DNA of 64,000 bases, taken from assembly GCA_038087875.1 (NCBI GenBank), contig CM075977.1, positions 151,466,001-151,530,000 on the forward strand, in the 5' to 3' direction. Under the pieces are notes generated by a model. The model had not been told where the DNA came from and did not search any database. It was given only the letters and a program-made list of their open reading frames with translations. Made by a program: the position numbers and the translations under genes. The stretch is from Malacoraja senta (taxonomy: Eukaryota). The number at the start of each line of letters is the position of its first letter. The first letter of the stretch is position 1. Positions 7,808 to 60,286 of this stretch are shown here, piece by piece.

Positions 7808-10800
7808 TTGCTCGACGCTGCCCACGTTGCCGATCCAATTAATTCGCAAGGGGAGGCAAGTGTATACTCACTCCTTCATGCACCTGGCCGGCTACCCGAT
7901 CCAACTGTTCTGATAACTGTCAACAATTCCGACTTTCACGCTAAGCTCGACACGGGGGCGAAGGTGAATGTAATGTCAATAAGCCTTTTCAAGAAGATAA
8001 GGAATAATGAGCTACTGATTGCAGTCCACTCTGCATGCTTACGGGGGCGAGGTGCTGAGACCGCTGGGAAAAGCTACTTTCACTTGTGTGCTGAAAAAGA
8101 CAACGCGTGCCTTGACCTTTTATGTTTTGAACTCTGACTGTGTGACTCTGTTGGGCAACCAGGCATGCCAGGATCTGGGATTGGTGTCGTTCGACAGAAC
8201 GGTCCACAAGGTGATGATATCGGTGGACCCGGTAAAGGAATACCCTGACCTGTTTAATGACGAACTGGGCAAGCTGCCTATTACCTACAAAATTGCTACT
8301 GATCCAAAGGTGTAACCTGTAATTCGTGCACCGCACAGAGTGTCTCACGCCATGAAGGACAAAGTCGAGTCCATGTTGAACGACATGGTCACCATGGGGG
8401 TGCTAGAAGCGGTCAGTGAGCCCACCGAGTGGGTGTCCACCATGGTTGCCACGTTAAAAAAGGACAAGAATGAAATCCGTGTGTGTATCAACCCTAAAGA
8501 CTTGAACCCTTGCCATCAGGCGCCCCCACTACCCCATGAGGACTGTTGAGGATGTTGCAGCTCAGGTCGGACAGGTCACCGTCTTCTCTGTCCTCGACGC
8601 AAAGAGCTCGTTTTGGCAGATACCGCTGGACAAGGGGTCATCGGATCTGACCACGTTTTCAACACCGTTCGGCAGATTCAAATGACATTCGGCATCAACT
8701 CTGCCAGCGAGGTGTTCCAGAGGACCATGGATCAGCTGTTCGCTGGCATGCCATGCGCCATCATTGTTGATGACATCCTGGTCTACGGGAAAGACGTGGT
8801 GGAGCACGACCAGAACCTACACTGTGTCCTGGAGCGGGCACGACTGATCAACCTCAAGCTTAACCCCAAGAAGTGCAGATTCCGGGTCTCCGAGGTCACT
8901 TACGTTGGCCATGTATTCACTCCTGCCGGACTCAAGCCCGATCCTTTGAAAGCTGCCGCTATCACTGAGAACCCGGCCCCCACCGACGTGCTCGGTCTAC
9001 AGAGTTTCCTGGGTATGGTGAACTATCTTGGGAAATTTATTCCCAACCTCAGCGAACTGAGCTCGTCCCTGCAACAACTGACTAGAAAAGACACCGCCTG
9101 GTCCTGGTTCCCGCAGCACCAGCAGGCTTTCGTTACTTTAAAGTCTAAGCTGATCAGCACTCCTACTCTGACGTTTCTCGACCTGAAGCGCCCCATCACC
9201 GTCACCTGTGATGCCTCGCGATTCGGGCTCGGTGCAGCCTGCCTACAGTCCTCTGCAGATGGCTCCCTGCTCCCGGTCTCCTATGCCTCCCGTACCATGA
9301 CCGACACCGAACAACGCTACGCACAGATCGAAAAGGAGCTGCTTGCTGTCGTTTTCGCCTGCTCTAAGTTCAAAGACTTTCTTTCCGGGAATTCTTTCGC
9401 AGTTGAGACTGACCACCAGCCATTGGTGACTATCCTGAATAAGCCGATCCATGTCGCACCTGCCAGGCTGCAACGTATGATGGTGCAGCTCCAGCGTTTC
9501 GACTTCACCATTGTCTACAAGAAGGGTACTGAAATGCACGTTGCGGACACTCTCTCTCGCGCCCCTCGCGCTACCTGCGATCGCCACCCATATGAACGGG
9601 AAGACCTCCTGGTGCTCGCCATTGACTTTGTCCCCACTAAGCAGCTTCAGTGCCTAGCCGAGCATACTGCCGCCGACCCCACTCTGCAGCGACTTTCTTC
9701 AGTGATAAAAGGGGGTTGGCCGAGCAAGCGCGCCAGCGCGCCCGCAGAGACACAGCCTTTTTTCCTGGTTCGCGACGAACTGGTCATCCAAGACGGCGTT
9801 ATTGTTAAGGGCCACAAGGTCGTGATCCCCTCCTCCCTGTATGACAAGTACTACAGCGTGGCCCACAGCGGGCACCCGGGCATTGATGCCACGATCGCCC
9901 ACGCACAGTGCCAATTTTACTGGCCTGGAATGGCAAAGTACATCCTGCAACAGCCTTGCGTCCCACCAGTAAAGGCAGCCCCTTTTGCAACAACCCGCGC
10001 CTGGCCTGGACCTCGGTGGCCGCTGACATTTTCGAGTGGCGTGGTAAATACTACCTTGTCCTGGCTGACTCATACTCGAACTGGTTCGAGGTTGACCTTC
10101 TGACCTCCCTCACATCCGAGATGGTCATCCGCAAGCTGAGGAAACATTTTTCCACTATCGGCTCGCCTGTCCGTCTGCAGGCCGACAACAGCAGGCAGTT
10201 TACCAGCCAGGAATTCAAGCACTTTGCCAACAAATGGAACTTCCTCCACTTCACGAGCAGCCCTGAGTACCCGCAGAGTAACGGGCTTGCTGAGCGGGCT
10301 GTCCGGAGTGCCAAACTACTAATGGAGCAAGCGCGCCTGGCGAATTCCGACTTTTACCTCGACCTCCTGAACCTAAGGAACATTTCCAGGGATGCAACCC
10401 TGGGCTCACCTGCCCAGCGGCTGATGTCCAGAACGACGAGACCACCGATTCCGATTGCTCAACACAAGCTGCTACCTCGGGTGCTGGAGCCTGCCTCCGT
10501 CCAGACGCGCATTCAGGAAAAGCACGACATCCAAAGACGGTCACATGATAGATCGTGCAAACCACTCAAGCCTCTGCTGCCTGGACAGGCCGTTCGTCTA
10601 CATACTGCTAGCGGATATTCCCATCTGGCCACCGTGGTTGGCATTGCCGACGCGCTTCGTTCGTACCTTGTGGACTTTGAAGGGACTGTTTACTGCAGGA
10701 GTCGTCAACACCTGCTTGCAGTACAGGAGCCGCTCCCGCAGGCAGCGGGACCCTACGCTCCGTCGCTGCAGTTCCAGCCATCCGCTGCTGATCCCGTTAC

Positions 10801-11035
10801 CGGCCCCTGCATGTCTCAGTCCCCTCGCGTGTTTTGTTCACCTCCGCGTGGGATGCCCATTGCTAACCGGTTTTCCACCCCTCCTGCACGTTTGTCTCCC
10901 CTGATGCTTTCTGTTTCCCCTACGGCTTCGTCGCCTCCGGGTTTGGGTCTTTCTGGTGAGGGGGGGGAAGGGTTGGACCGTACGCGCTCGGGCCGTGTCA
11001 GCAAGCCGCCTGTTCGGTATGGTGATTTTGTTTAA
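7808..11035 (+). pseudogene. pol: Gypsy pol (protease, RT, RNase H, integrase), frameshifted
   Basis: KLDTGA protease; IIVDDILV RT; TCDASRFGLGA...YAQIEKELLA RNase H; ADIF...ADN...YPQSNGLAERAV integrase. Split across several ORFs, with an in-frame stop at 8313-8315. Confidence 0.92.
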
Positions 11036-18229: not shown

Positions 18230-19605
18230 CTGTGGGTGTATTTATTGATTTATGTAAAGCATTTGATACAATTGATCATTCCTTACTTTTTGCAGAAATT
18301 GGAACGTTATGGTATAAAAGGTGTCACAAAAAATTGGTTGGGAAGTTATTTAAGTAATAGGTTTCAGTATGTAAAAATTAATAATACTGAATCACAGCTT
18401 AGAAGAGTATCTGTGGTGTTCCACAAGGTTCGGTACTGGGTCCTAAGTTATTTATACTTTATTTAAATGATATTTGTAAAGTACCCAATACGTTGAAGTT
18501 TGTTATGTTTGCGGATGATACAAATGTATTTTGTTCAGGGAATGATATAAAAGAACTATTGAAAACAGCAGAAAGAGAATTGATAGTGCTAAAAAAATGG
18601 TTTGATATTAATAAATTATCCCTAAATGAAAATAAAACAAAATTTATGGTGTTTGGTGGTGACAGGGTTAATTGTGAAATAAAATTGAATTTAAATGGAG
18701 TTGAAATTGAAAGAATATATCAAACAAAATTCCTGGGAGTGATTATAGATCATAAACTTTGTTGGAAGCCACATATAGAATACACTAAACGGAAATTATC
18801 TAAATCCATTGCCATTCATTCCAAAACAAAGGATCTGTTGAATAAGAAGTGTTTGTATATATTGTATTGCTCGCTTATAATGCCATATATGTCATATTAT
18901 GTCGAAGTTTGGGGAAATGTATATAAAACAAATATAGACCCTAAAATTAAACTCCAGAAAAGAGCTATTAGAATAAAGCTTCTTACCGTGAAACTACAAA
19001 TCCATTATTCATAAAGTCCGGTACCTTAAAATCTTTGGATATTGTGCATGTAAAGACATTAGAAATACTTTTCCGAGTTAAGAATAAAAGCCTTCCTGTT
19101 AGTATTTAAAAAAAAAAAAAATTAAGAGGAGGACATTATAATTTAAGAGGGTTGTGTATTTTTGAAACATGTAAAGTGAGAACCAATGTAAAATATAGAT
19201 GTGTCTCAGTTTTGGGAGTCAAATTATGGAATGGGCTTAGTGATGAGTTGAAAATTTGTAGCTCTCTGTTGAGTTTCAAAAAAGCCTTAAAATGTAAAAT
19301 AATTAAGGATTATAATGTAAAATGATTAAAATGTAAAATAAGTAAGGATTACAATTTAGAGTAAATTTTATTTTTTTCTTTCCTTTGTAATGCTGATATT
19401 CTGGGTTATCTTATGGATTGTATCAGATAGGCAAAAATAAGCGTTGTGGCTTCAGCCTATTCCTTTTTCGGTCATTGATTATGTGAACGTTGTGTGAAAT
19501 GGATACAGTGTTGGTTCATATTCACACAGATTGTAAAGTTTTGTTCTTTTTAATGTATGACTGAAATAAACTATTCATTCATTCATTCATTCATTCATTC
19601 ATTCA
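18230..19605 (+). mobile_element. 5'-truncated AT-rich CR1/L2-group LINE (Crack/Daphne-like) nested in the hAT
   Basis: FIDLCKAFDTIDH, GVPQGSVLGP and FADDTN RT motifs; AATAAA followed by a (TTCA)n tail. Confidence 0.88.
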
Positions 19606-19795
19606 TACAAGGAAAATGTGAGAGTGATTTCAGCTAACAAAGATCTTGAAGAAATACAAAACATAACTAAAGTTCTCAAAGGTAGTTGTAATGCACAAGA
19701 TATCGATATGAATATAGATATCTGTAGCTTGTTTCGGGTATGCACGAGTGACCTCAGCTGGGGTAGAAAGAAGTTTTCACAACTGAAGCATATTC

Positions 19796-20840
19796 TAGGT
19801 ATGTTACAAAATTTACCTTCAGCGGCGCTGCAGTTCTGTCACTGCCCGTGTGCGCAACTTTGGCGCCTTTGAGCGGGGGGCGGGTTTAAAATGCAGTATT
19901 TCTCCAGCCTATTCAAATCGATTTTGAACAGGCTGTTTAGATGCTGAAGAAAAATCGCTTCGACATTGGTTTTATTAAATTTATTTTAAACTGCACTGGA
20001 TAATTTAATAGCAGGAGTAAATTAAAAAGCATCTTCTAAAGCCGTCAACGCCGACAACGGGGACGGATTTCACGTACGGGACAGGTAAAAAAAAGCCGTT
20101 TATTTTACATATAAACTTGCTTCTTAGGATGCCTTTAATCAACATTTTCCATTGCGAAAAGGTGATTATGTAAATATACGAACCGGCAGTGTTTTTCCTG
20201 CCGATATGGGGTTTAAATGCACCGCAACCGCAACGTTTCAAACGATCGCGTTCCACAAAATCCCACTCGCAAGATGATTAAAATGGCCATTCATTTACGG
20301 GAATTAAACACTAAATTCCTTCCATTTCGCCTATAAATTCATGACAATGAGATTTAAAAATCATGTTATATTGTGAATTCTTGTGTGAATGTTATTTGGA
20401 CACTTAGGCTATTTAAAAATGTTATATCTTTTCTTAAGAAATTGATAGATGTTTAGATCTAGTAATTGAATTTTGTAATTAGCTACAATTAGGTAACTAA
20501 CTAATTATATGCTTTAATTTCAGGTCATCCAAGTAAGATTGTTTCATATTTGTTTCAGAATGCTTCAATTTATAATAACTGAAAATTTCATTCAGTTCTC
20601 TTAATTTTTAAGAAAGTTATGGGCTTTTGACTGTCCTCGATCACAGCTTTTGAGTTAAGTCAATGGAAAAGCAATCGGGAACAAGATGCTAATTTCCGAG
20701 TATGAAAATGGCCATAACATTTTTAATACTGAAGATATGAAAGTGAATTAGGTGTCAAATTAAACTTCTTTTTATGCTTTATCTGAAGGGATAAATTGCA
20801 GACTTGATTTTTAAAATCTCAAAATTTTGTAACATTGCTA
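19796..20840 (+). mobile_element. Non-autonomous DNA transposon with TAG termini and 7-bp TSD (hATw-like), copy 1
   Basis: Imperfect TIR TAGGTATGTTACAAAATTT / AAATTTTGTAACATTGCTA; TSD CATATTC at 19789-19795 and 20841-20847. Confidence 0.9.
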
Positions 20841-22219
20841 CATATTCTGTCTGACAGACAGCATATTTTAACACCAGATTATTTGGAAAAATAATTATGT
20901 GCAACCAGGCAACTTTGGTCATTTAATGTAGTATACCTTAAAATATTATTATTTTTAACCATATTTTGGTAGTGGAAATAAATGCCTTTTATGCCTTTTT
21001 TGTAATTTTATTATGCCTTTTTGCCTGCCTATTTCAGATTTTTTTTAGTGCCTAAACATCCTGGCTCTACTTACATTTAAACAGCACAAGTATGTGTATT
21101 TGATGACCCAGGGCCTCCAGGGTCTGGCACTGCTTTAAAATGTGATCAGGTTGAGGTTAAATGGCACAAATATGAGACCCTGAATGATTTACATCTGTGC
21201 CATAAATTTCTTATGATTTGATTATTTATTAATCTGTGCAAAATTAAAGACATACATTTGAAGTAGTCTCATTACATATAGATATTGCCAGGAATGAATG
21301 ATATTTTGTTCTGCAGTGAATTGCATGTGAAAATAAAGTATTACATTTATTTGGCATCTTACTTATTCATTTCTAGACACCTCAAGGTCATTTATAGTCA
21401 ATTAAGTAATTGTAAAGTGGTGATGCCATAAAGACACTAGCCAATTTGCACATAGCGACGTTCCACAAACAATGATTGATACTGACCGGATAATTATTTT
21501 AGTGAGGCAGAAGACTGAAGAAAGGTCTCAATCCTTAATGTCACCTATTCCTTCTCACCAGAGATGCTGCCTGACCCGTTGAGTTACTCCAGCATTTTGT
21601 GCCTGTCTATTAGTGTCTATTTTAGTGAATTTGAATGAGTGACACATGTTGGGACCAGGACCATCTCCTCTGCTCCTCTTTGTTAAAATTGTCATGGATT
21701 ATTTTATGTCCACGTGAGACGGCTCAATTTCATATCTTACGCAAAAGACTGTAATGGAGTATGAGCCAACCATTTTGTGCTTAAGTTTCTGAAGTAAGTT
21801 TTAAACCCACAACACTTTGAATCAGTGTTGCCAACTGAGCTACAGCTGTGGTACTTAAACATCTGCTCAAGGTATTGTGTTTTATCATGTATAGAGATGA
21901 TCTTGGATGACCTGTCCTGGGCCCAGTTCATAGAATTAACTCCAAAGGTGCATGCCAGCACCTATACTTTCTAGAATTTGAAGAGGTTTATTTATATCTC
22001 TGAATGTTCTAACAAACATCTAGAGATATTCTGTAGAAGGTATCCTGACTGGTTGCATCATGACCTACTTTGATAATTACAAAGACAATTCTTACATTAA
22101 TGTAAGAATCTGAAGGTGCACAGTCCCACCTTCCATCCATAGCTTCGACGTGAAGTGCTGCCTCTAAAGGCAGTATCTGTCATCAAGGATCCCCACACCT
22201 AGGTCTTGCCCTGGTACAC

Positions 22220-22830: not shown

Positions 22831-23646
22831 GTGTTCCAGGTTCTTCCTGCTTCCTGCTGCAGAACCTTGAAGTTGCACATTATCAAGTTCAACAACAGCT
22901 AATTTCCTATAACTATCATGTACTTGAACCAACCTGCACAACCCTAATCCTACCTTGCAATGGTACAGTTCATCTCGGACTTTTTTTTCCTATTTATGTT
23001 CTTTTGCACCAATGTCTTGTTTTTCCACAGCCTTTGTTTAAGAAATTGTGTATTAAATTTTAGCATAATTTATGTTTCACAGAGAAGGTGGTTAAGATTA
23101 AGAATGACAATGATCAAGGACTGATGGCAAGTTCGATTGAAATACTAGGAATCAATAGCAGTTCCTTACTATGTCTGGAGATGAGCAGCCATATTTCTTG
23201 CAAGTTCTTGCTCTTCTAATTGTTGTGCTCAATGCACAGTTCTGAGTATTTTGTTAGAACTAGAAACTACATTTGTCTTTATATCATAAATAATCTTGCC
23301 GATCAAAGGAAGCTGGAATTCATCTGAAAACCTTTTTTTTTATCATTTCGATATTAATCATAAATATTATAAAAAGCAAGATACCCAATAGTGAGCCCTG
23401 TAGAATCTCTTGTAACAGTTTACCAGGCACAAACACATCCAACTATAGCCCATTACCTCATGCACTTAATTTGAGTTAGTAAGTTGGCAGGATTTATGTT
23501 TTTTTTAATGGACTGCATTCATGGACTGCATTCATTGCACTGCTTCTAATAGCCCTCTTTATTATCTCATTAAAACATTAAATCTAGTTCAAAAGGTATA
23601 ATATCCCCATAACAAATCTACATTGACTATCCCTGATTTATCTGTG

Positions 23647-25534
23647 TAGGAATGTTACAGAATTTTGAGATTTTAAAAATCAAGCCTGTAATTTATCCCA
23701 TCAGATAAACCATAAAAATAACTTTAATTTGATACCTAATTCACTTTCATATCTTCACTATTACAAAAGTTATGGTCATTTTCATATTCGGAAATTAGCA
23801 TCTTGTCCCCATTTGCTTTTCCATTGACTTAACACAAAAGCTGTGATCGAGGACAGTCAATTGACATAAAAGCCCATAACTTTCTTAAAAATTAAGAGAA
23901 CTGAATGAAAGTTTCAGTTATTATAGATTGAAGCATTCTGAAACAAATATGAAACATCTTACTTGGATGACCTGAAATTAAAGCAAATAATTAGTTAGTT
24001 ACCTAATTGTAGCTAATTACAAAATTGACTGTTGTGACAGAAAGAGTAATAAACGCCTTGAAAATTCAAAAATGTGATATTCTCAAGATCAGAACTTTAA
24101 TATTATTGTATTATATGCTGTAAGTCCGTAACAGACAGGTAAAGAAATAACAATTTTTAGCGAAAGACCAAGTCTTTATGGAGAAGATCAGCTGCTAGCT
24201 GGTACATTGGCATATCATAATCAGTAGCATCATCATACTCCTCAGATTGTAACCAATAAGCAACTCTGTACACCTTGTTTTTCCTCAACTTTTCAATTTT
24301 GGCATTGTAAACTACAAGTTTTTGCTCTTCAAACCACACATGACATGCCTTTCTGCCCACTACATTCCCATTAAGAATGTCCTGTAGATCATCACATTTG
24401 GAGTAGTCCAAATTCGGATAATCTCTGCGAATGCTGTCTAAATCAGTCTCTTTTGCTGGGCATTTTGATTGACAATTTTGTATTTCTTCTTCGGAGACAT
24501 CTGTTTAAAATGTAAAGAAAAAAAAACACTGAACAGCATTAACAGAAACAAGTTATTATTTGCAGATTTAGAAAAAAGAAGTAGAAATGATAAAGTTAAA
24601 CGTTAAAACAAATAGTAAATAACCAACAAAAAATTCATATTCATCAGTTCCATCAAATCAATTAAATTCATCTAATCAATTCAATTCATCTAAATTCAAT
24701 TACTAGATCTAAACATCTATCCATTTCTTAAGAAAAGGCTAAAAATTTTAAATAGCCAAAGTATCCAAATAACAAATAACAAACTGATCCCATTCACTCA
24801 ATAATTCACAATATAACATGATTTTAAAATCTCACTTTGTCATGAATTTATATGCCAAATGGAAGGAATGTTTAATGTTTAATTCCCATAAATGAATCCA
24901 GAAACATCCACTCTCAAGATAATCAAAATCATTATTTTTTTGCACAATACATCTGACTAAAGCTGTACTGTGGATATTTGGTATGAAAATATTGATCATT
25001 GATAGACAATAACACAAAATATAGATGATTTCGATGTTCTTATGACATGATTGTGCAAAAAAATAATGAATTTGATTATCTTGAGAGTGGATGTTTCTGG
25101 ATTGTGATCGATTGGATTGTGGCCGCTGCCATGATTTAAGCCCCTATCGGCAGGCAAGACACAGCCGATTCGTATTGGGGCCTAAATAACATTTTTCGCA
25201 TCATAAGATTAAAATGAAGCCACACCAAAAAGCAAGATAATATGTTAAATAAACGACATACCTTTTGTTTTGTCCTGCACTTGCGATCCGTGATGTTGAA
25301 GGCATTGAAGGCGTTAGAACTTCAATTCAGCGATGCAATCGACCAGCAACTTTAAAAAAAAACGGGAGCGGGATCGCAGAACGGATTTTCGTCATCAGCT
25401 AACAACCCGAGCAAACTCCTCTCTGACGACCAATACAAACCTGCATTTTAATCCCCCCCCCCCCCCCCCCCAAAGCCTCCGGAACCGCACGCACAGGCAG
25501 CAGGCAGATCTGGAGCACTATTGTAGCAAAGCTA
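23647..25534 (-). mobile_element. Same 7-bp-TSD DNA transposon family, copy 2 (longer, retains a coding remnant)
   Basis: Termini TAGGAATGTTACA and TGTAGCAAAGCTA; TSD ATCTGTG at 23640-23646 and 25535-25541; homologous to copies 1 and 3. Confidence 0.9.
24157..24500 (-). pseudogene. Transposon-borne coding remnant with Spin/Ssty (spindlin Tudor)-like C-terminus
   Basis: Open frame from an AG acceptor at 24502-24501 to TAA. Contains NVVGRKACHVWFE...YRVAY...MYQLAADLLHKDLVF. Domain call is by recalled similarity only. Confidence 0.55.
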
Positions 25535-25771
25535 ATCTGTGCCATTCCAAATGGAGTTTTATAATAACCCTTAGAATGGATTCCAATAGTTTGTCTATCA
25601 CCAAATTTAAATGAATGTAAATTTAGCATCCATGTAATATATGCTAACATGTATACATCTTTAGCATTCGGAACCATTTTGCTGGCAGCGTAGCATATTT
25701 TTATGTGATTTATGAGGTTGTAGGAGGAGACCAGTGGTACATAATTATTTTATTTCGCTATTTACATACAT

Positions 25772-25960
25772 ACATAGATACATAGAAAATAGGTGCAGGA
25801 GTAGGCCATTCGGCCCTTCGAGCCTGCACCGCCATTCAATATGATCATGGCTGATCATCCAACTCAGTATCCCGTACCTGCCTTCTCTCCATACCCCCTG
25901 ATCCCTTTAGCCACAAGGGCCACATCTAACTCCCTCTTAAATATAGCCAATGAACTGGCG
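25772..25960 (-). mobile_element. CR1/HER1 3' end, low divergence
   Basis: CR1 3' UTR GGCTCGAAGGGCCGAATGGCCTACTCCTGCACCTATTTTCTATG on the minus strand. Confidence 0.85.
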
Positions 25961-29128: not shown

Positions 29129-30226
29129 TATTGAATGGAACACGTCCCTGTACATCAACTTCATCGACTTTGAGAAAGCGTTTGACAGCTTAGACAGGAC
29201 AACACTATGGCGCCTAATGGACCACTATGGAATTCCCACCATCATAAACTTAATCAAGAACTCGTATGATTGAACCTCATGCAAAGTTATGCATGCAGGC
29301 CAGCTCTCTCAGAGCTTTAGTGTCAGGGCGGGCGTCAAGCAGGGATGTCTATTGTCACCATTCCTGTTCCCCCTGGCAATTGACTGGATCATGATGGAAA
29401 CAACTGAAGGGAAAAGAAATGGAATTCAGTGGACAATGTGGGAGCAGCTAGATGATCTTGACTTTGCAGACGACATAGCTCTCCTTTCACACACACAGGT
29501 TAAAATGCAGGAGACGACAGACAGACTCTCACAAGCTGCAACAAAACTTGGTCTTACACCCAACACAGCAAAGACACAGGTGATGAGGATCCACTCCAAA
29601 ACCAGCAACCCTATCCTTTTGCACAGCACTGCTCTAGAGGAGGTAGAAACATTCACATACCTAGGCAGAGTTGTGGACATCACCAGAGGGGCAGAGGCAG
29701 ACTTAAAAAGGAGAATCAATAAGGCCAGGGTGGTGTTTAACATGCTCAGGAAGATCTGGAGCTCAAAACACATCTCAATCAACACCAAAATACCCATCTT
29801 TATCTCAAATGTGAAACAGGTGATGCTGTATGGATCAGAGACATGGAAAACAACAAAACACACGACAAACAGGCTGCAAACATTCATTAACACCTGCCTT
29901 AGGAGAATACTTAACATCTGGTGGAGAGACAAAGTAAGTAATGTGGACCTGTGGAAAAGAACAAGCCAGGAGCCCATTCAAAGGAGAAAATTGAGTTGGA
30001 TTGGACACACGCTCAGGAAACCTGCCACAAATATCACCCGGCAAGCCCTGAAATGGAACCCCCAAAAAGGAAAAGAGGAACAGCTGGAGAAGAGGTGTCC
30101 AGACAGAAATGTCTGAGAGTGGGCCCAACTGGGGAGATCGTGAAAGAACTACCAACAACCGAGTGAGGTGGAGGACATTTGTCAATGGCCTATGCTCCCG
30201 AGAGGTACAAAGGGCTTAAGAAGACG
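29129..30226 (+). mobile_element. 5'-truncated RTE-clade LINE
   Basis: YINFIDFEKAFDS, GVKQGCLLSP, LDFADDIALL and LYGSETW motifs; 12-bp TSD ATTGTTATTTTC at 29117-29128 and 30227-30238. Confidence 0.93.
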
Positions 30227-57705: not shown

Positions 57706-58803
57706 CAGTGGCTTGCAAAAGTTTTCATACCCCTTGAACTTTTCCACATTTTGTCACGTTACAACCACAAACGTAAATGTATTTTATTGGGATTTTATGT
57801 GATAGACCAACACAAAGTGGTGAATAATTGTGAAGTGGAACGAAAATGATACATGGTTTTCAAATTGTTTTACAAATAAAAAACTGAAAAGTGTCACGTG
57901 CAAAAGTATTCAGCCCCCCGAGTCAATACTTTGTAGAACCACCTTTTGCTGCAATTACAGCTGCAAGTCTTTTGGGGTATGTCTCTACCAGCTTTGCACA
58001 TCTAGAGTGAAAATTGTGCCCATTCTTCTTTGCAAAATAGCTCAAGCTCAGTCAGATTGGATGGAGAGCGTCTGTGAACAGCAATTGTCAAGTCTTGCCA
58101 GAGATTCTCAATTGGATTTAGGTCTGGACTTTGACTGGGCCATTCTAACACATGAATATGCTTTGATCTAAACCATTCCATTGTAGCTCTGGCTGTATGT
58201 TTAGGGTCGTTGTCCTGCTGGAATGTGAACCTCCGCCCCAGTCTCAAGTATTTTGCAGACTCTAACAGGTTTTCTTCCAAGATTGCCCTGTATTTGGCTC
58301 CATCCATCTTCCCATCAACTCTGACCAGCTTCCCTGTCCCTGCTGAAGAAAAGCATCCCCACAGCATGATGCTGCCACCACCATGTTTCACAGTGGGGAT
58401 GGTGTGTTCAGGGTGATGTGCAGTGTTAGGTTTCCGCCACACATAGCGTTTTGCATTTAGGCCAAAAACTTCAATTTTGGTCTCATCTGACCAGAGCACC
58501 TTCCTCCACAAGCTTGGGATATTTGTTTATAACCTAACCCTGCTTTAAACTTCTCCACAACTTTATCCCTGACCTGTCTGGTGTGTTCCTTGGGCATCAT
58601 GATGCTGTTTGTTCACTAATGTTCTCTAACAAACCTCTGAGGCCTTCACAGAACAGCTGTATTTATACTGAGATTAGATTACACACAAGTGGACTCTATT
58701 TACTAATTAGGTGACTTCTGAAGGCAATTGGTTGCACTGGATTTATTTAGGGGTATCAGAGTAAAGGGGGCTGAATACTTTTACACGTGACACTTTTCAG
58801 TTT
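57706..58803 (-). mobile_element. Tc1-like (DD34E, IR/DR type) transposon, internally deleted and truncated
   Basis: TA|CAGTGGCTTGCAAAAG terminus; inner repeat CAAAAGTATTCA at 57901 with its inverse near 58772. ORF 58002-58511 contains VLWSDETKIE, FQQDNDPKH and SPDLNPIENLW. Confidence 0.93.
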
Positions 58804-60286
58804 GGGGGGGGCAGGAATAAACTGCCGTTTTCTCCTGCCTGTCGGAGGCGGACTTCCTCGGGCTGCTAGCTGCAGAAGAATAATCGATCCGACTTCCATT
58901 CCCGATTTTTTAATTTTTTAATCACGAGACAATTTAATAATTTGATTAAAATAAAAAGCGACTTCTAACGCCCTCAACGCCCACAACGTGACGGATCGCA
59001 AGAACGGGACAACACAAAGGGTAAGTTGATTATTTTACATATAATCTTGCTTCTTGCGGTGGCTTTAATCTAATTTTTCGTTGCGAAAATGTGATTTGGC
59101 CCCATACGAACCGGCCCCATACGAATCCTGCCGATATGGGGTTCAAATTCACTGCAAATGCAAAGTTCCAATCGATCGCGTTCCAGAAAAACCCACTCGC
59201 AAGATGATTTAAATGCTCTTTTTTTATGGACAATCATGTCATAACAGCATCTAAATCGTCTATATTTTGTGTTATTGTCTACCCATAGTCAATATTTTTA
59301 TACTAAATATCAGTTTTAGTCCCATGTATTGTGCAAAAAAATTAAAATGTTGATTATATTGAGTGGATGTTTCTAGATTAATTTATGGGAATTAAACATT
59401 AAATTCCTTCCATCTGGCATATGAATTCATGACAGTGAGATTTAGAATTCATGTTATATTGTGAATTCTTGTGTGAATGGGATTAGTTTGTTATTTGGAT
59501 ACTTAGGCTATTTAAAAAAAAAAACATTTTCTTAAGAAATGGAATCTACAGGACATTCTTAATGGGAAAGTAGTGGGCAGAAAGGCATATCATGCGTTGT
59601 TTGAAGAGTAAAAACTTGTAGTTTACAATGCCAAAATTGAAAAGTTGAGGAAAAACAAGGTGTACAGAGTTGCTTATTGGTTACAATCTGAGGAGTATGA
59701 TGATGCTACTGATTATGATATGCCAATGTACCAGCTAGCAGCTGATCTTCTCCATAAAGACTTGGTCTTTCGCTAAAAATTGTTATTTCTTTACCTGTCT
59801 GTTACGGACTTACAGCATATAATACAATAATATTAAAGTTCTGATCTTGAGAATATCACATTTTTTAATTTTCAAGGCAGTCTGGGTGTTTATTACTCTT
59901 TCTGTCACAACAGTCAATTTTGTAATTAGCTACAATTAGGTAACTAACTAATTATTTGCTTTAATTTCAGGTCATCCAAGTAAGATGTTTCATATTTGTT
60001 TCAGAATGCTTCAATCTATAATAACTGAAAATTTCATTCAGATCTCTTAATTTTTAAGAAAGTTATGGGCTTTTGACTGTCCTCGATCAAAGTTTTTGTG
60101 TTAAGTCAATGCAAAAGCAATAGGGAACAAGATGCTAGTTTCCGAGTATGAAAACGGCCATAACTTTTTTAATACTGAAGACATGAAAGTGAATTAGGTG
60201 TCAAATTAAACTTCTTTTTATGCTTTATCTGATGGGATAAATTGCAGACTTGATTTGTTAAATCTCAAAATTTTGTAACTTTGCTA
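58804..60286 (+). mobile_element. Same 7-bp-TSD DNA transposon family, copy 3 (left end missing)
   Basis: Right TIR AAATTTTGTAACTTTGCTA. Spin/Ssty-like coding remnant at 59546-59775 with a CAA to TAA stop. Confidence 0.88.

What the first reader, a model, noticed from the sequence alone, without database searches (positions are those of the whole stretch)
23647..25534. DNA transposon family whose coding remnant resembles a spindlin-type (Spin/Ssty) Tudor domain
Seen: three related copies (19796-20840, 23647-25534, 58804-60286). Copies 2 and 3 keep a C-terminal coding stretch NVVGRKACHVWFEE...VYRVAY...MYQLAADLLHKDLVFR*. Recalled: spindlin repeats read NIVGCRIQHGWKE...YLIKY and ...MYQLLDDYKEGDLRI, and spindlins are methyl-histone (H3K4me3) readers also involved in germline transposon silencing. 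Inference: the autonomous parent encodes a transposase, or accessory protein, with a chromatin-reader module. That could guide target choice or interfere with silencing, and could link spindlin genes to transposons. The domain call rests on by-eye similarity and no catalytic domain survives here.
Basis: partly seen in the sequence, partly recalled or inferred. Interest (0 to 1): 0.8.

Follow-up and report, generated by a model that had tools for sequence, protein, structure and literature searches.

The report
Dead transposon copies keeping Tudor tail
Three broken copies of a cut-and-paste jumping gene lie here, and two still carry the tail of its cutting enzyme, which is predicted to fold like the histone-mark-reading module of Spindlin proteins, so the family may choose landing sites by reading chromatin, though nobody has tested this.

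Summary
There are three related copies. [quoted passage not shown] Copy 2 keeps an open tail-coding frame and copy 3 a decayed one.

All three are non-autonomous internal-deletion derivatives. Copy 2 keeps the native start (MSPKKKYK...) fused out of frame at 24453/24454 to the last 98 codons, so it cannot make the domain.

The tail has 239 relatives (E<=1e-3). It sits at the extreme C-terminus of ~850-1000-aa animal proteins, sponge to fish, that have no Pfam match. Of 93 full-core proteins, 78 carry it.

- **Tail:** the AlphaFold2 model (pLDDT 93) is a Tudor-type barrel. Its best solved matches are Spindlin repeat 2, the H3K4me3 pocket (Z up to 8.6). Aromatic residues are conserved at three of the four cage positions.
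- **Core:** the model (pLDDT 91.5) matches the Hermes hAT transposase (Z 15.5-18.6) and has D, D, CxxH and E motifs.

Histone binding and target choice remain untested.

Pfam's Spin-Ssty model does not match. In a Foldseek-independent search an RDM15 Tudor scores as well as Spindlin.

This scan has already reported the same family, including intact copies, on other DNA of this genome. Transposons carrying chromatin readers are known, so this is a new variant of a known kind.

The parts
23647..25534 (-). Copy 2: complete non-autonomous element of 1888 bp; the transposase sense strand is the minus strand
   Evidence: TIR motif at 23647. Termini and flanks. Alignment with copies 1 and 3. RNA reads end at 23646/23647 and run into many different flanks.
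23640..23646 (.). Copy 2 target-site duplication ATCTGTG, left copy; the right copy is at 25535-25541
   Evidence: Flank comparison.
23647..23666 (+). Terminal inverted repeat at the 3' end of the gene (TAGGAATGTTACA...)
24157..24159 (-). Native stop codon of the transposase frame
   Evidence: The family proteins end at the same place.
24160..24453 (-). Last 98 codons of the transposase: end of the basic linker plus the Spindlin-like Tudor barrel, still open
   Evidence: tblastn matches to six family proteins start at 24408-24453, exactly at 24453 for P0003, P0075 and P0117. AlphaFold2 model pLDDT 93.3. Fold matches.
24453..24454 (.). Internal-deletion junction that joins N-terminal codons to the tail out of frame
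   Evidence: Homology to family proteins stops at 24453. Contigs of related copies leave the window sequence here and read RKRKKLGTKL in the tail frame.
24454..24500 (-). Native start codon (24498-24500) and the first ~15 codons, MSPKKKYKIVNQNAQ; this frame stops after 20 codons
   Evidence: Aligns with the MPPKKK[FRK]K N-termini of full-length family proteins. The frame offset follows from the coordinates.
24501..25263 (-). 5'-UTR intron (GT..AG on the minus strand), ending directly before the ATG
   Evidence: Donor AAAAG|GTATGT and acceptor AAACAG|ATG. The joint 24501->25264 with ends CT..AC is seen in contigs of runs X15 and X16. X16 may be DNA.
24895..25103 (.). 209-bp palindrome inside the intron (54-nt arms, 98% complementary)
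   Evidence: pair I5. It is less symmetrical in copy 3.
25264..25534 (-). 5' end of the element: non-coding first exon or promoter region with a poly-C tract and a degenerate TIR
   Evidence: The transcription start site is not determined.
19796..20840 (+). Copy 1: complete 1045-bp MITE-like derivative without any coding remnant; TSD CATATTC at 19789-19795 and 20841-20847
   Evidence: The same deletion joint (24021->24692) is seen in many contigs and 55 RNA reads.
58811..60286 (+). Copy 3: truncated derivative that lacks its 5' terminus and abuts a Tc1-like remnant
   Evidence: Its deletion joint (24389->24720) recurs in other copies.
59546..59776 (+). Copy 3 tail remnant: 76 codons plus the stop, with an in-frame stop at 59609-59611

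Best explanation
**What is here.** The three repeats are non-autonomous internal-deletion derivatives of one cut-and-paste DNA transposon family. The family has a TIR of TAGGnATGTTACAAAATTT and a 7-bp TSD.

**The autonomous parent (not in this window).** It encodes a protein of roughly 850-1000 aa made of these parts:
- a basic MPPKKK N-terminus,
- a coiled coil,
- a Hermes (hAT)-like DDE core: an RNase-H fold with a large all-helical insertion domain and a CxxH motif,
- a ~35-aa Lys/Arg-rich linker,
- a single C-terminal Tudor barrel most like Spindlin repeat 2.

**State of the copies.**
- Copy 2 keeps the 5'-UTR exon, the intron, the start codon, about 15 N-terminal codons and, after an out-of-frame deletion junction, the last 98 codons.
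- Copy 3 keeps 76 decayed tail codons.
- Copy 1 keeps no coding sequence.

The tail remnants here are passengers without function. The copies moved in trans, using only their ends.

**Inferred, not shown.** In the intact enzyme the barrel, on its flexible basic linker, tethers the transpososome to nucleosomes that carry a methyl-lysine mark, H3K4me-like. This would bias integration, as chromodomains do for chromoviral integrases.
For: - **Copies, TIRs, TSDs, deletions:**
- **Deletion forms are multi-copy, and the terminus is flanked by many different sequences:**
- **Native start retained:**
- **Related copies continue in frame from the tail into the linker at 24453:**
- **Coding sequence under purifying selection between lineages:** dN/dS about 0.04.
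- **Family size and domain position:** 239 relatives, with the domain almost always at the extreme C-terminus. Of 93 full-core proteins, 78 have it, 14 are cut short and 1 lacks it. The family occurs in sponge, Hydra, molluscs, echinoderms, a priapulid, a sea spider and fishes, always unnamed.
- **Tail fold:** pLDDT 93.3. Spindlins top Foldseek and VIA-align, aligned to SPIN1 123-193.
- **Cage positions:** the profile alignment puts W39, Y48 and Y65 at the positions of F141, W151 and Y170. These are aromatic in 72, 76 and 75 of 76 members. The cage residues themselves are documented in PMC3967050.
- **Core fold:** pLDDT 91.5 with the strand order of an RNase-H fold. Hermes scores Z 15.5-18.6 over 333-354 residues, against about 10.5 for integrase cores. 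D69, D146, C171xxH174 and E443 are invariant or nearly so.
- **Expression:** sense-strand polyA RNA over the coding part, 45-96 against 3-13 reads.
Against: - No full-length copy with these TIRs was recovered here, so the link between TIR and transposase rests on the element's internal anatomy and on short contigs.
- Pfam finds nothing in the tail or the core: no Spin-Ssty and no hAT, P, MULE or KDZ model.
- The TSD is 7 bp, not the 8 bp typical of hAT.
- The margins for the tail fold are small. VIA-align gives Z 8.6 against 7.2 for an RDM15 Tudor and 6.8 for SH3-like barrels. Without Foldseek pre-selection RDM15 ties with Spindlin-4, and no Z reaches 8.
- The fourth cage residue (Y177) has no clear counterpart.
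- The C-terminal half alone finds no spindlin.
- No binding or integration data exist.
Confidence: 0.7

Rival explanations
1. The C-terminal barrel is not a histone reader. It is a generic SH3/Tudor-like module that binds DNA or mediates multimerisation, like the SH3-like C-terminal domain of retroviral integrases or the N-terminal barrel of Tn7 TnsB.
For: TnsB (Z 6.8) and the TraI barrel (Z 6.8) score close to the Tudors. The tool's own note says Z under 8 can reflect only a common arrangement. The domain sits at the C-terminus of a DDE enzyme, behind a basic linker, which is where integrases carry their DNA-binding barrel.
Against: Sequence profiles, not only shape, pick out spindlins. Aromatic residues are almost invariant at three cage positions, and acidic residues are conserved in the last helix. 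The nearest solved folds (Spindlin, RDM15, BAHCC1) are all methyl-lysine readers.
Confidence: 0.2
2. The barrel binds methyl-arginine, for example symmetric dimethyl-arginine on PIWI proteins. It would then serve the transposon by interfering with piRNA silencing rather than by choosing targets.
For: SMN-type Tudors appear in the fold lists at Z 5.3 and 24% identity. Spindlin repeat 1 reads methyl-arginine (PMC3967050).
Against: SMN-type Tudors score well below Spindlin repeat 2 and RDM15. The extended-Tudor (SN-like) flank typical of PIWI binders is absent. Nothing here bears directly on the idea.
Confidence: 0.05
3. The tail exon is a host gene fragment captured by a MITE-like element (transduplication), and the long proteins are unrelated host genes.
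For: No catalytic sequence lies in the window. No TIR/TSD pair was found around full-length genes in the Hydra, Scleropages and Asterias loci.
Against: The same element copy holds the family's N-terminal start and its C-terminal tail. The tail is a constant part of a Hermes-like enzyme. Many paralogues exist per genome, for example in Hydra. Contigs of related copies run from the tail into the linker.
Confidence: 0.05

Closest known systems
Hermes / hAT superfamily transposases
   Same: Both have an RNase-H-like DDE core split by a large all-helical insertion domain, a CxxH motif after the second Asp, and the Glu on a late helix. The structural match is Z 15.5-18.6 over ~340 residues. TIRs are short and begin TAG. 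Internally deleted non-autonomous derivatives occur.
   Different: No Pfam hAT model matches (Dimer_Tnp_hAT, DUF659, DUF4371, BED). The TSD is 7 bp, not 8. No BED zinc finger was detected. A coiled coil lies before the core and a Tudor barrel lies after it.
Spindlin (Spin/Ssty) repeat 2, the H3K4me3 pocket of SPIN1
   Same: The barrel topology is the same, 1.8-3.0 A over 63-68 residues. The motif VG..I.H.W...Y.G is shared, and aromatic residues sit at the F141, W151 and Y170 positions. The ending has a conserved Asp...GDL pattern like that of SPIN1; this last point is read by eye.
   Different: It is a single domain, not three interlocked repeats. Two extra N-terminal helices are present. An 8-residue acidic insert (E.YDDA.DY) lies before the last helix. 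It falls below Pfam's threshold. It is fused to a transposase.
Chromodomain-bearing integrases (chromoviruses such as MAGGY) and hAT-Chromo or PHD transposon fusions
   Same: In both, a mobile-element enzyme carries its own methyl-lysine reader at one end. Such fusions are catalogued in bioRxiv 10.1101/2021.11.30.470311.
   Different: Both halves are invisible to Pfam, so domain-based surveys would miss the family. Any targeting is unproven.
P superfamily (P element, Galileo)
   Same: 7-bp TSDs occur in Galileo (PMC2775673). A coiled coil precedes the core. The core is an RNase-H fold with an insertion domain. P element transposase is the second-best Foldseek hit, E 6e-3.
   Different: No THAP domain is present. 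The structural match is much weaker than to Hermes; P element is absent from the VIA-align top 50, so Z is below 9.8.

Membership tests
hAT superfamily | DDE RNase-H-like core interrupted by an all-alpha insertion domain, as in Hermes | tested here: met
   AlphaFold2 model at pLDDT 91.5. Hermes scores Z 15.5-18.6 with 333-354 aligned residues, far above integrase cores. Foldseek E is 6e-6.
hAT superfamily | CxxH motif shortly after the second catalytic Asp | tested here: met
   C171 and H174 are invariant in 70 cores and lie 25 residues after D146.
hAT superfamily | 8-bp target-site duplication | tested here: not met
   Two complete copies both show 7 bp, CATATTC and ATCTGTG. There are only two observations.
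hAT superfamily | Sequence match to hAT profile models (hAT dimerisation domain, DUF659/DUF4371, BED finger) | tested here: not met
   Ten full-length proteins give no Pfam hit at E<=0.01. Seventy cores give only noise at E<=1. Proteins named DUF659, DUF4371 and BED appear only as distant structural neighbours, E about 1e-9.
hAT superfamily | Short TIRs beginning YARNG | tested here: inconclusive
   The termini read TAGGA, TAGGT and TAGCA, which is 3-4 of the 5 positions. The consensus itself is recalled from general knowledge.
Spin/Ssty (Spindlin) family | Tudor-like five-strand barrel of a Spin/Ssty repeat | tested here: met
   Residues 19-97 align to SPIN1 123-193. An ESM Atlas Spin-Ssty cluster aligns at 1.6 A over 59 residues.
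Spin/Ssty (Spindlin) family | Match to Pfam PF02513 above the gathering score | tested here: not met
   The window frame gives no hit. One of 76 family members hits at E=0.018.
Spin/Ssty (Spindlin) family | Three tandem repeats forming one globule | tested here: not met
   There is one domain per protein, at the C-terminus.
Spin/Ssty (Spindlin) family | Aromatic cage F141/W151/Y170/Y177 and acidic D184/D189 (PMC3967050) | tested here: inconclusive
   Three cage positions are aligned by HMMER and are aromatic in 72-76 of 76 members. Y177 has no clear counterpart. The correspondences D88~D184 and D93~D189 rest only on the alignment ranges and on reading by eye. The model's coordinates could not be inspected.
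Dada superfamily | No TIRs; insertion into snRNA or tRNA genes; CCCC and CCHC zinc fingers; 6-7-bp TSD | tested here: not met
   Only the TSD length fits. The copies have clear TIRs, the flanks are not small-RNA genes, and the protein ends in a Tudor barrel rather than a zinc finger.
P superfamily | N-terminal THAP domain and closest fold to P element transposase | tested here: not met
   No THAP hit. P element scores Foldseek E 6e-3 against 6e-6 for Hermes, and is not in the VIA-align top 50.

The most novel reading that the evidence does not exclude
An unannotated, animal-wide lineage of Hermes-like transposases carries its own methyl-lysine reader, a Spindlin-type Tudor. That would make it the first cut-and-paste transposase with a built-in Tudor targeting module. 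The animal Spindlin gene family and this transposase tail may also share a direct origin, by domestication in one direction or the other.
Probability: 0.25. Interest if true: 0.8.

Novelty: new variant of a known kind. Interest (0 to 1): 0.5.

Why it matters
If the tail reads histone methylation, this family would be a natural case of chromatin-guided DNA transposition by a single protein. Three uses would follow.
- It would help explain insertion biases.
- It would give a template for targeted gene-delivery vectors.
- It would allow a test of whether chromatin readers such as spindlins were exchanged between transposons and hosts.

The result also shows that a widespread transposase family, present from sponges to fishes, is invisible to Pfam in both its catalytic and its reader parts. 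Domain-based surveys of transposon-chromatin fusions therefore undercount such cases.

For this window itself the practical result is annotation: three dead non-autonomous copies, with no functional gene.

Tried and rejected
- **Pfam scans.** Scans of the window frame, P0001, the upstream frame of L001, ten full-length proteins, nine mid-length proteins, 76 tails and 70 cores gave nothing above threshold.
- **phmmer of the tail against PDB sequences.** Only noise.
- **Profile of full-length proteins against PDB sequences.** Only coiled-coil noise.
- **Profile of the C-terminal half of the tail against PDB.**
- **Dada superfamily.** Considered because of the 6-7-bp TSD, and rejected.
- **Splicing of exon 1 into the tail frame.** The idea that copy 2's frame is a terminal exon spliced to the upstream exon in frame was rejected. 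The acceptor is followed directly by the native ATG in another frame.
- **TIR+TSD scan around full-length genes.** Loci from Hydra, Scleropages and Asterias (L006-L008) gave only low-complexity or weak pairs. The scan also missed copy 2's own degenerate TIR, so it is uninformative.
- **Nucleotide similarity of L001-L005 to the window.** Confined to the tail coding region, so these loci gave no termini.
- **Literature searches.** Searches for transposase with spindlin or Tudor found no description of this fusion.
- **P0081.** Its 12 partial matches belong to a repetitive protein that hits CesT. I judged it unrelated and set it aside.

Full report
**Observation.** The three copies are real.
- blastn of 23401-25800 against the window finds copy 3 (to 60286). 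It is 93% identical over 23647-24389, lacks 24390-24719, and is 79% identical over 24720-25319.
- The same search finds copy 1 (19796-20840). It is 92% identical over 23645-24026 and 82% over 24692-24897, with the middle missing.
- The terminal motif occurs three times against 0.09 expected by chance.
- Copy 1 has 17/20 matching termini and a 7-bp duplication, CATATTC.
- Copy 2 has a degenerate second terminus and a 7-bp duplication, ATCTGTG.
- Copy 3 lacks its second terminus and abuts a Tc1-like remnant.
- The quoted minus-strand frame is present.
- The copy 3 version has five residue changes, one of them a stop, and no synonymous change.

**Anatomy of copy 2.** Sense is the minus strand. 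From the 5' end the parts are:
- a degenerate TIR at 25534;
- a non-coding first exon ending at the donor AAAAG|GTATGT (25264/25263);
- an intron, 25263-24501;
- the acceptor AAACAG, followed directly by ATG at 24500-24498.

The peptide from this ATG, MSPKKKYKIVNQNAQ, aligns with the MPPKKK[FRK]K N-termini of the full-length family proteins.

Homology to the family's C-termini begins at 24408-24453 in tblastn with six proteins, exactly at 24453 for the three that reach furthest. It lies in a different frame from the ATG.

Copy 2 is therefore an internal-deletion derivative. About 15 N-terminal codons are joined out of frame, at 24453/24454, to the last 98 codons. The native frame stops after 20 codons. 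No catalytic sequence survives anywhere in the window.

**Reads.** Four public runs were laid on 23600-25600.
- The copy 1-type deletion (24021->24692) appears in several contigs and 55 RNA reads.
- The copy 3-type deletion (24389->24720) appears in a contig and 6 reads. Both deletion forms are therefore propagated subfamilies.
- A joint 24501->25264 with ends CT..AC (GT..AG on the sense strand) removes exactly the predicted intron in contigs of two runs. One of those runs may be DNA, so this fits splicing but does not prove it.
- At 24453, contigs of related copies leave the window sequence. Joined to the window's tail, they read RKRKKLGTKL-KETDLDSIRRD. This matches the ERKKLEKKLKE linker of P0001-P0003. 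The parent ORF therefore runs from the linker into the tail.
- In a stranded polyA library, depth over 24203-24870 is 45-96 against 3-13 in the direction expected for sense RNA. The terminal ~350 bp is covered on both strands.
- Reads ending at 23646/23647 continue into unrelated sequences, which confirms the terminus.

**Protein family.**
- The word-indexed search found one relative, P0001, at 77% identity. Its contig has, upstream and one frame off, the motif SARSHNIDAEE.MGMFS.
- Against that relative the tail shows pS 0.74 and pN 0.13, so dN/dS is about 0.04. This is a real coding domain under selection.
- An exhaustive profile search gave 239 proteins at E<=1e-3 and 86 at E<=1e-10. The domain is almost always at the extreme C-terminus.
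- Ten proteins of 729-990 aa align end to end. Their conserved blocks are LGFDATTQEG.H.N, TMTDR..VNHA, ELNCHLHPLD, PRYRGNRLH, LLTGPWM and SAR.HNIDAE..MGMFS.
- A second search with the core found 147 proteins. They come from a sponge, Hydra (many paralogues), molluscs, echinoderms, a priapulid, a sea spider and fishes. All are unnamed.
- Of 93 proteins with a complete core, 78 carry the tail. Fourteen end within 90 residues of the core. One has a long tail without the domain.

**The tail.**
- Pfam does not recognise it.
- A 76-sequence profile searched against PDB sequences puts Spindlin-4, -3 and -1 on top, E 0.01-0.5, and 17 of the 25 hits are spindlins. The shared motif is VG..I.H.W...Y.G...Y.V.Y.
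- The AlphaFold2 model has pLDDT 93.3: two helices, then four strands, a helix and a fifth strand.
- Foldseek on PDB gives mostly spindlins: probability about 1, rmsd 2.1-3.3 A.
- AlphaFold DB Swiss-Prot gives spindlins and Ssty1, aligned to SPIN1 128-193, which is repeat 2.
- VIA-align gives Z 7.3-8.6 for 24 spindlin entries, then RDM15 Tudor 7.2, BAHCC1 7.0 and SH3-like barrels 6.8.
- A search that does not rely on Foldseek ranks RDM15 (7.2) and Spindlin-4 (7.0) together, and no Z reaches 8.
- An ESM Atlas Spin-Ssty cluster aligns at 1.6 A over 59 residues.

Repeat 2 of SPIN1 holds the H3K4me3 cage F141/W151/Y170/Y177 and the acidic D184/D189 (PMC3967050). The HMMER alignment places W39, Y48 and Y65 at the first three cage positions. 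These are aromatic in 72, 76 and 75 of 76 members. D88 is present in 75 of 76. The fourth cage residue and the acidic pair could not be aligned by a tool.

I read this as a Tudor barrel whose nearest solved relatives are methyl-lysine readers, most like Spindlin repeat 2. It is not a member of Pfam's Spin-Ssty family as that family is defined.

**The core.**
- The model of P0075:285-790 (70-sequence alignment) has pLDDT 91.5. Its order of elements is strand-strand-strand-helix-strand-helix-strand, then a ~230-residue helical region, then a late helix.
- D69, D146, C171xxH174 and E443 are invariant or nearly so.
- Foldseek ranks Hermes first (E 6e-6 to 2e-3), then P element transposase (6e-3).
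- VIA-align gives Hermes Z 15.5-18.6 over 333-354 residues, against about 10.5 for integrase cores. P element is not in the top 50.
- In AlphaFold DB clusters the nearest neighbours are unnamed animal and fungal proteins. Clusters named DUF659, DUF4371 and BED appear only at about 1e-9.
- No Pfam transposase model is matched, even weakly.

**Classification.** The enzyme works like a hAT transposase and has its architecture. It fails two membership features, the 8-bp TSD and any profile match. I therefore call it hAT-like rather than hAT.
- Dada shares only the TSD length.
- Galileo of the P superfamily also makes 7-bp TSDs. However, there is no THAP domain and the fold match to P is weak.

**Mechanism.**
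- *Shown:* the anatomy of the copies, the ownership of the tail by a Hermes-like enzyme, and the predicted folds.
- *Inferred:* the transposase binds the TIRs, cuts and pastes with a 7-bp stagger, and uses the barrel on its basic linker to hold on to methyl-lysine-marked nucleosomes, which would bias integration.
- *Probabilities:* I put the anatomy and family assignment at about 0.85-0.9 and the histone-reader function at about 0.4. The main rival is a DNA-binding or multimerisation barrel, as in integrase C-terminal domains.

**Novelty.** Transposon-borne Chromo and PHD readers, including hAT-Chromo fusions, are known (bioRxiv 10.1101/2021.11.30.470311). I found no paper on a transposase with a spindlin-type Tudor.

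This scan has already reported the same family on other DNA of this genome, including intact copies and another dead copy. My tests were run independently of those notes and agree with them.

This window adds only dead copies, so I score interest as moderate.

Noticed in passing
window 8613-11035 (+): Two overlapping long frames carry reverse transcriptase, RNase H, integrase zinc-binding and integrase core domains. This is an LTR-retrotransposon pol, Gypsy-like by domain order.
   Followed up: partly
window 29289-30116 (+) and 18493-19014 (+): Non-LTR-type reverse transcriptase fragments. The first also carries DUF6451. The second lies just upstream of copy 1.
   Followed up: partly
window 58005-58511 (-): A Tc1/mariner DDE_3 transposase remnant next to the truncated end of copy 3. 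The Tc1-like insertion probably removed or displaced the missing terminus of copy 3.
   Followed up: partly
window 24895-25103: A 209-bp near-perfect palindrome (54-nt arms, 98% complementary) inside the intron of copy 2. The matching region of copy 3 is much less symmetrical, which suggests a copy-specific conversion or repair event.
   Followed up: no
P0005 (139 aa, cluster representative): In another genome an internal deletion joins the MPPKKK N-terminus in frame to the Tudor tail, which predicts a mini-protein without a catalytic core. Such products could compete with the full transposase for chromatin, but this is untested.
   Followed up: no
window 25448-25463: A poly-C tract in the 5' region of copy 2. 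Its length differs among the three copies.
   Followed up: no
P0153 (Nymphon striatum): This family member is annotated 'Protein bric-a-brac 2' and carries a BTB domain (PF00651). It is probably a gene-model chimera of a host gene with a transposon copy.
   Followed up: no
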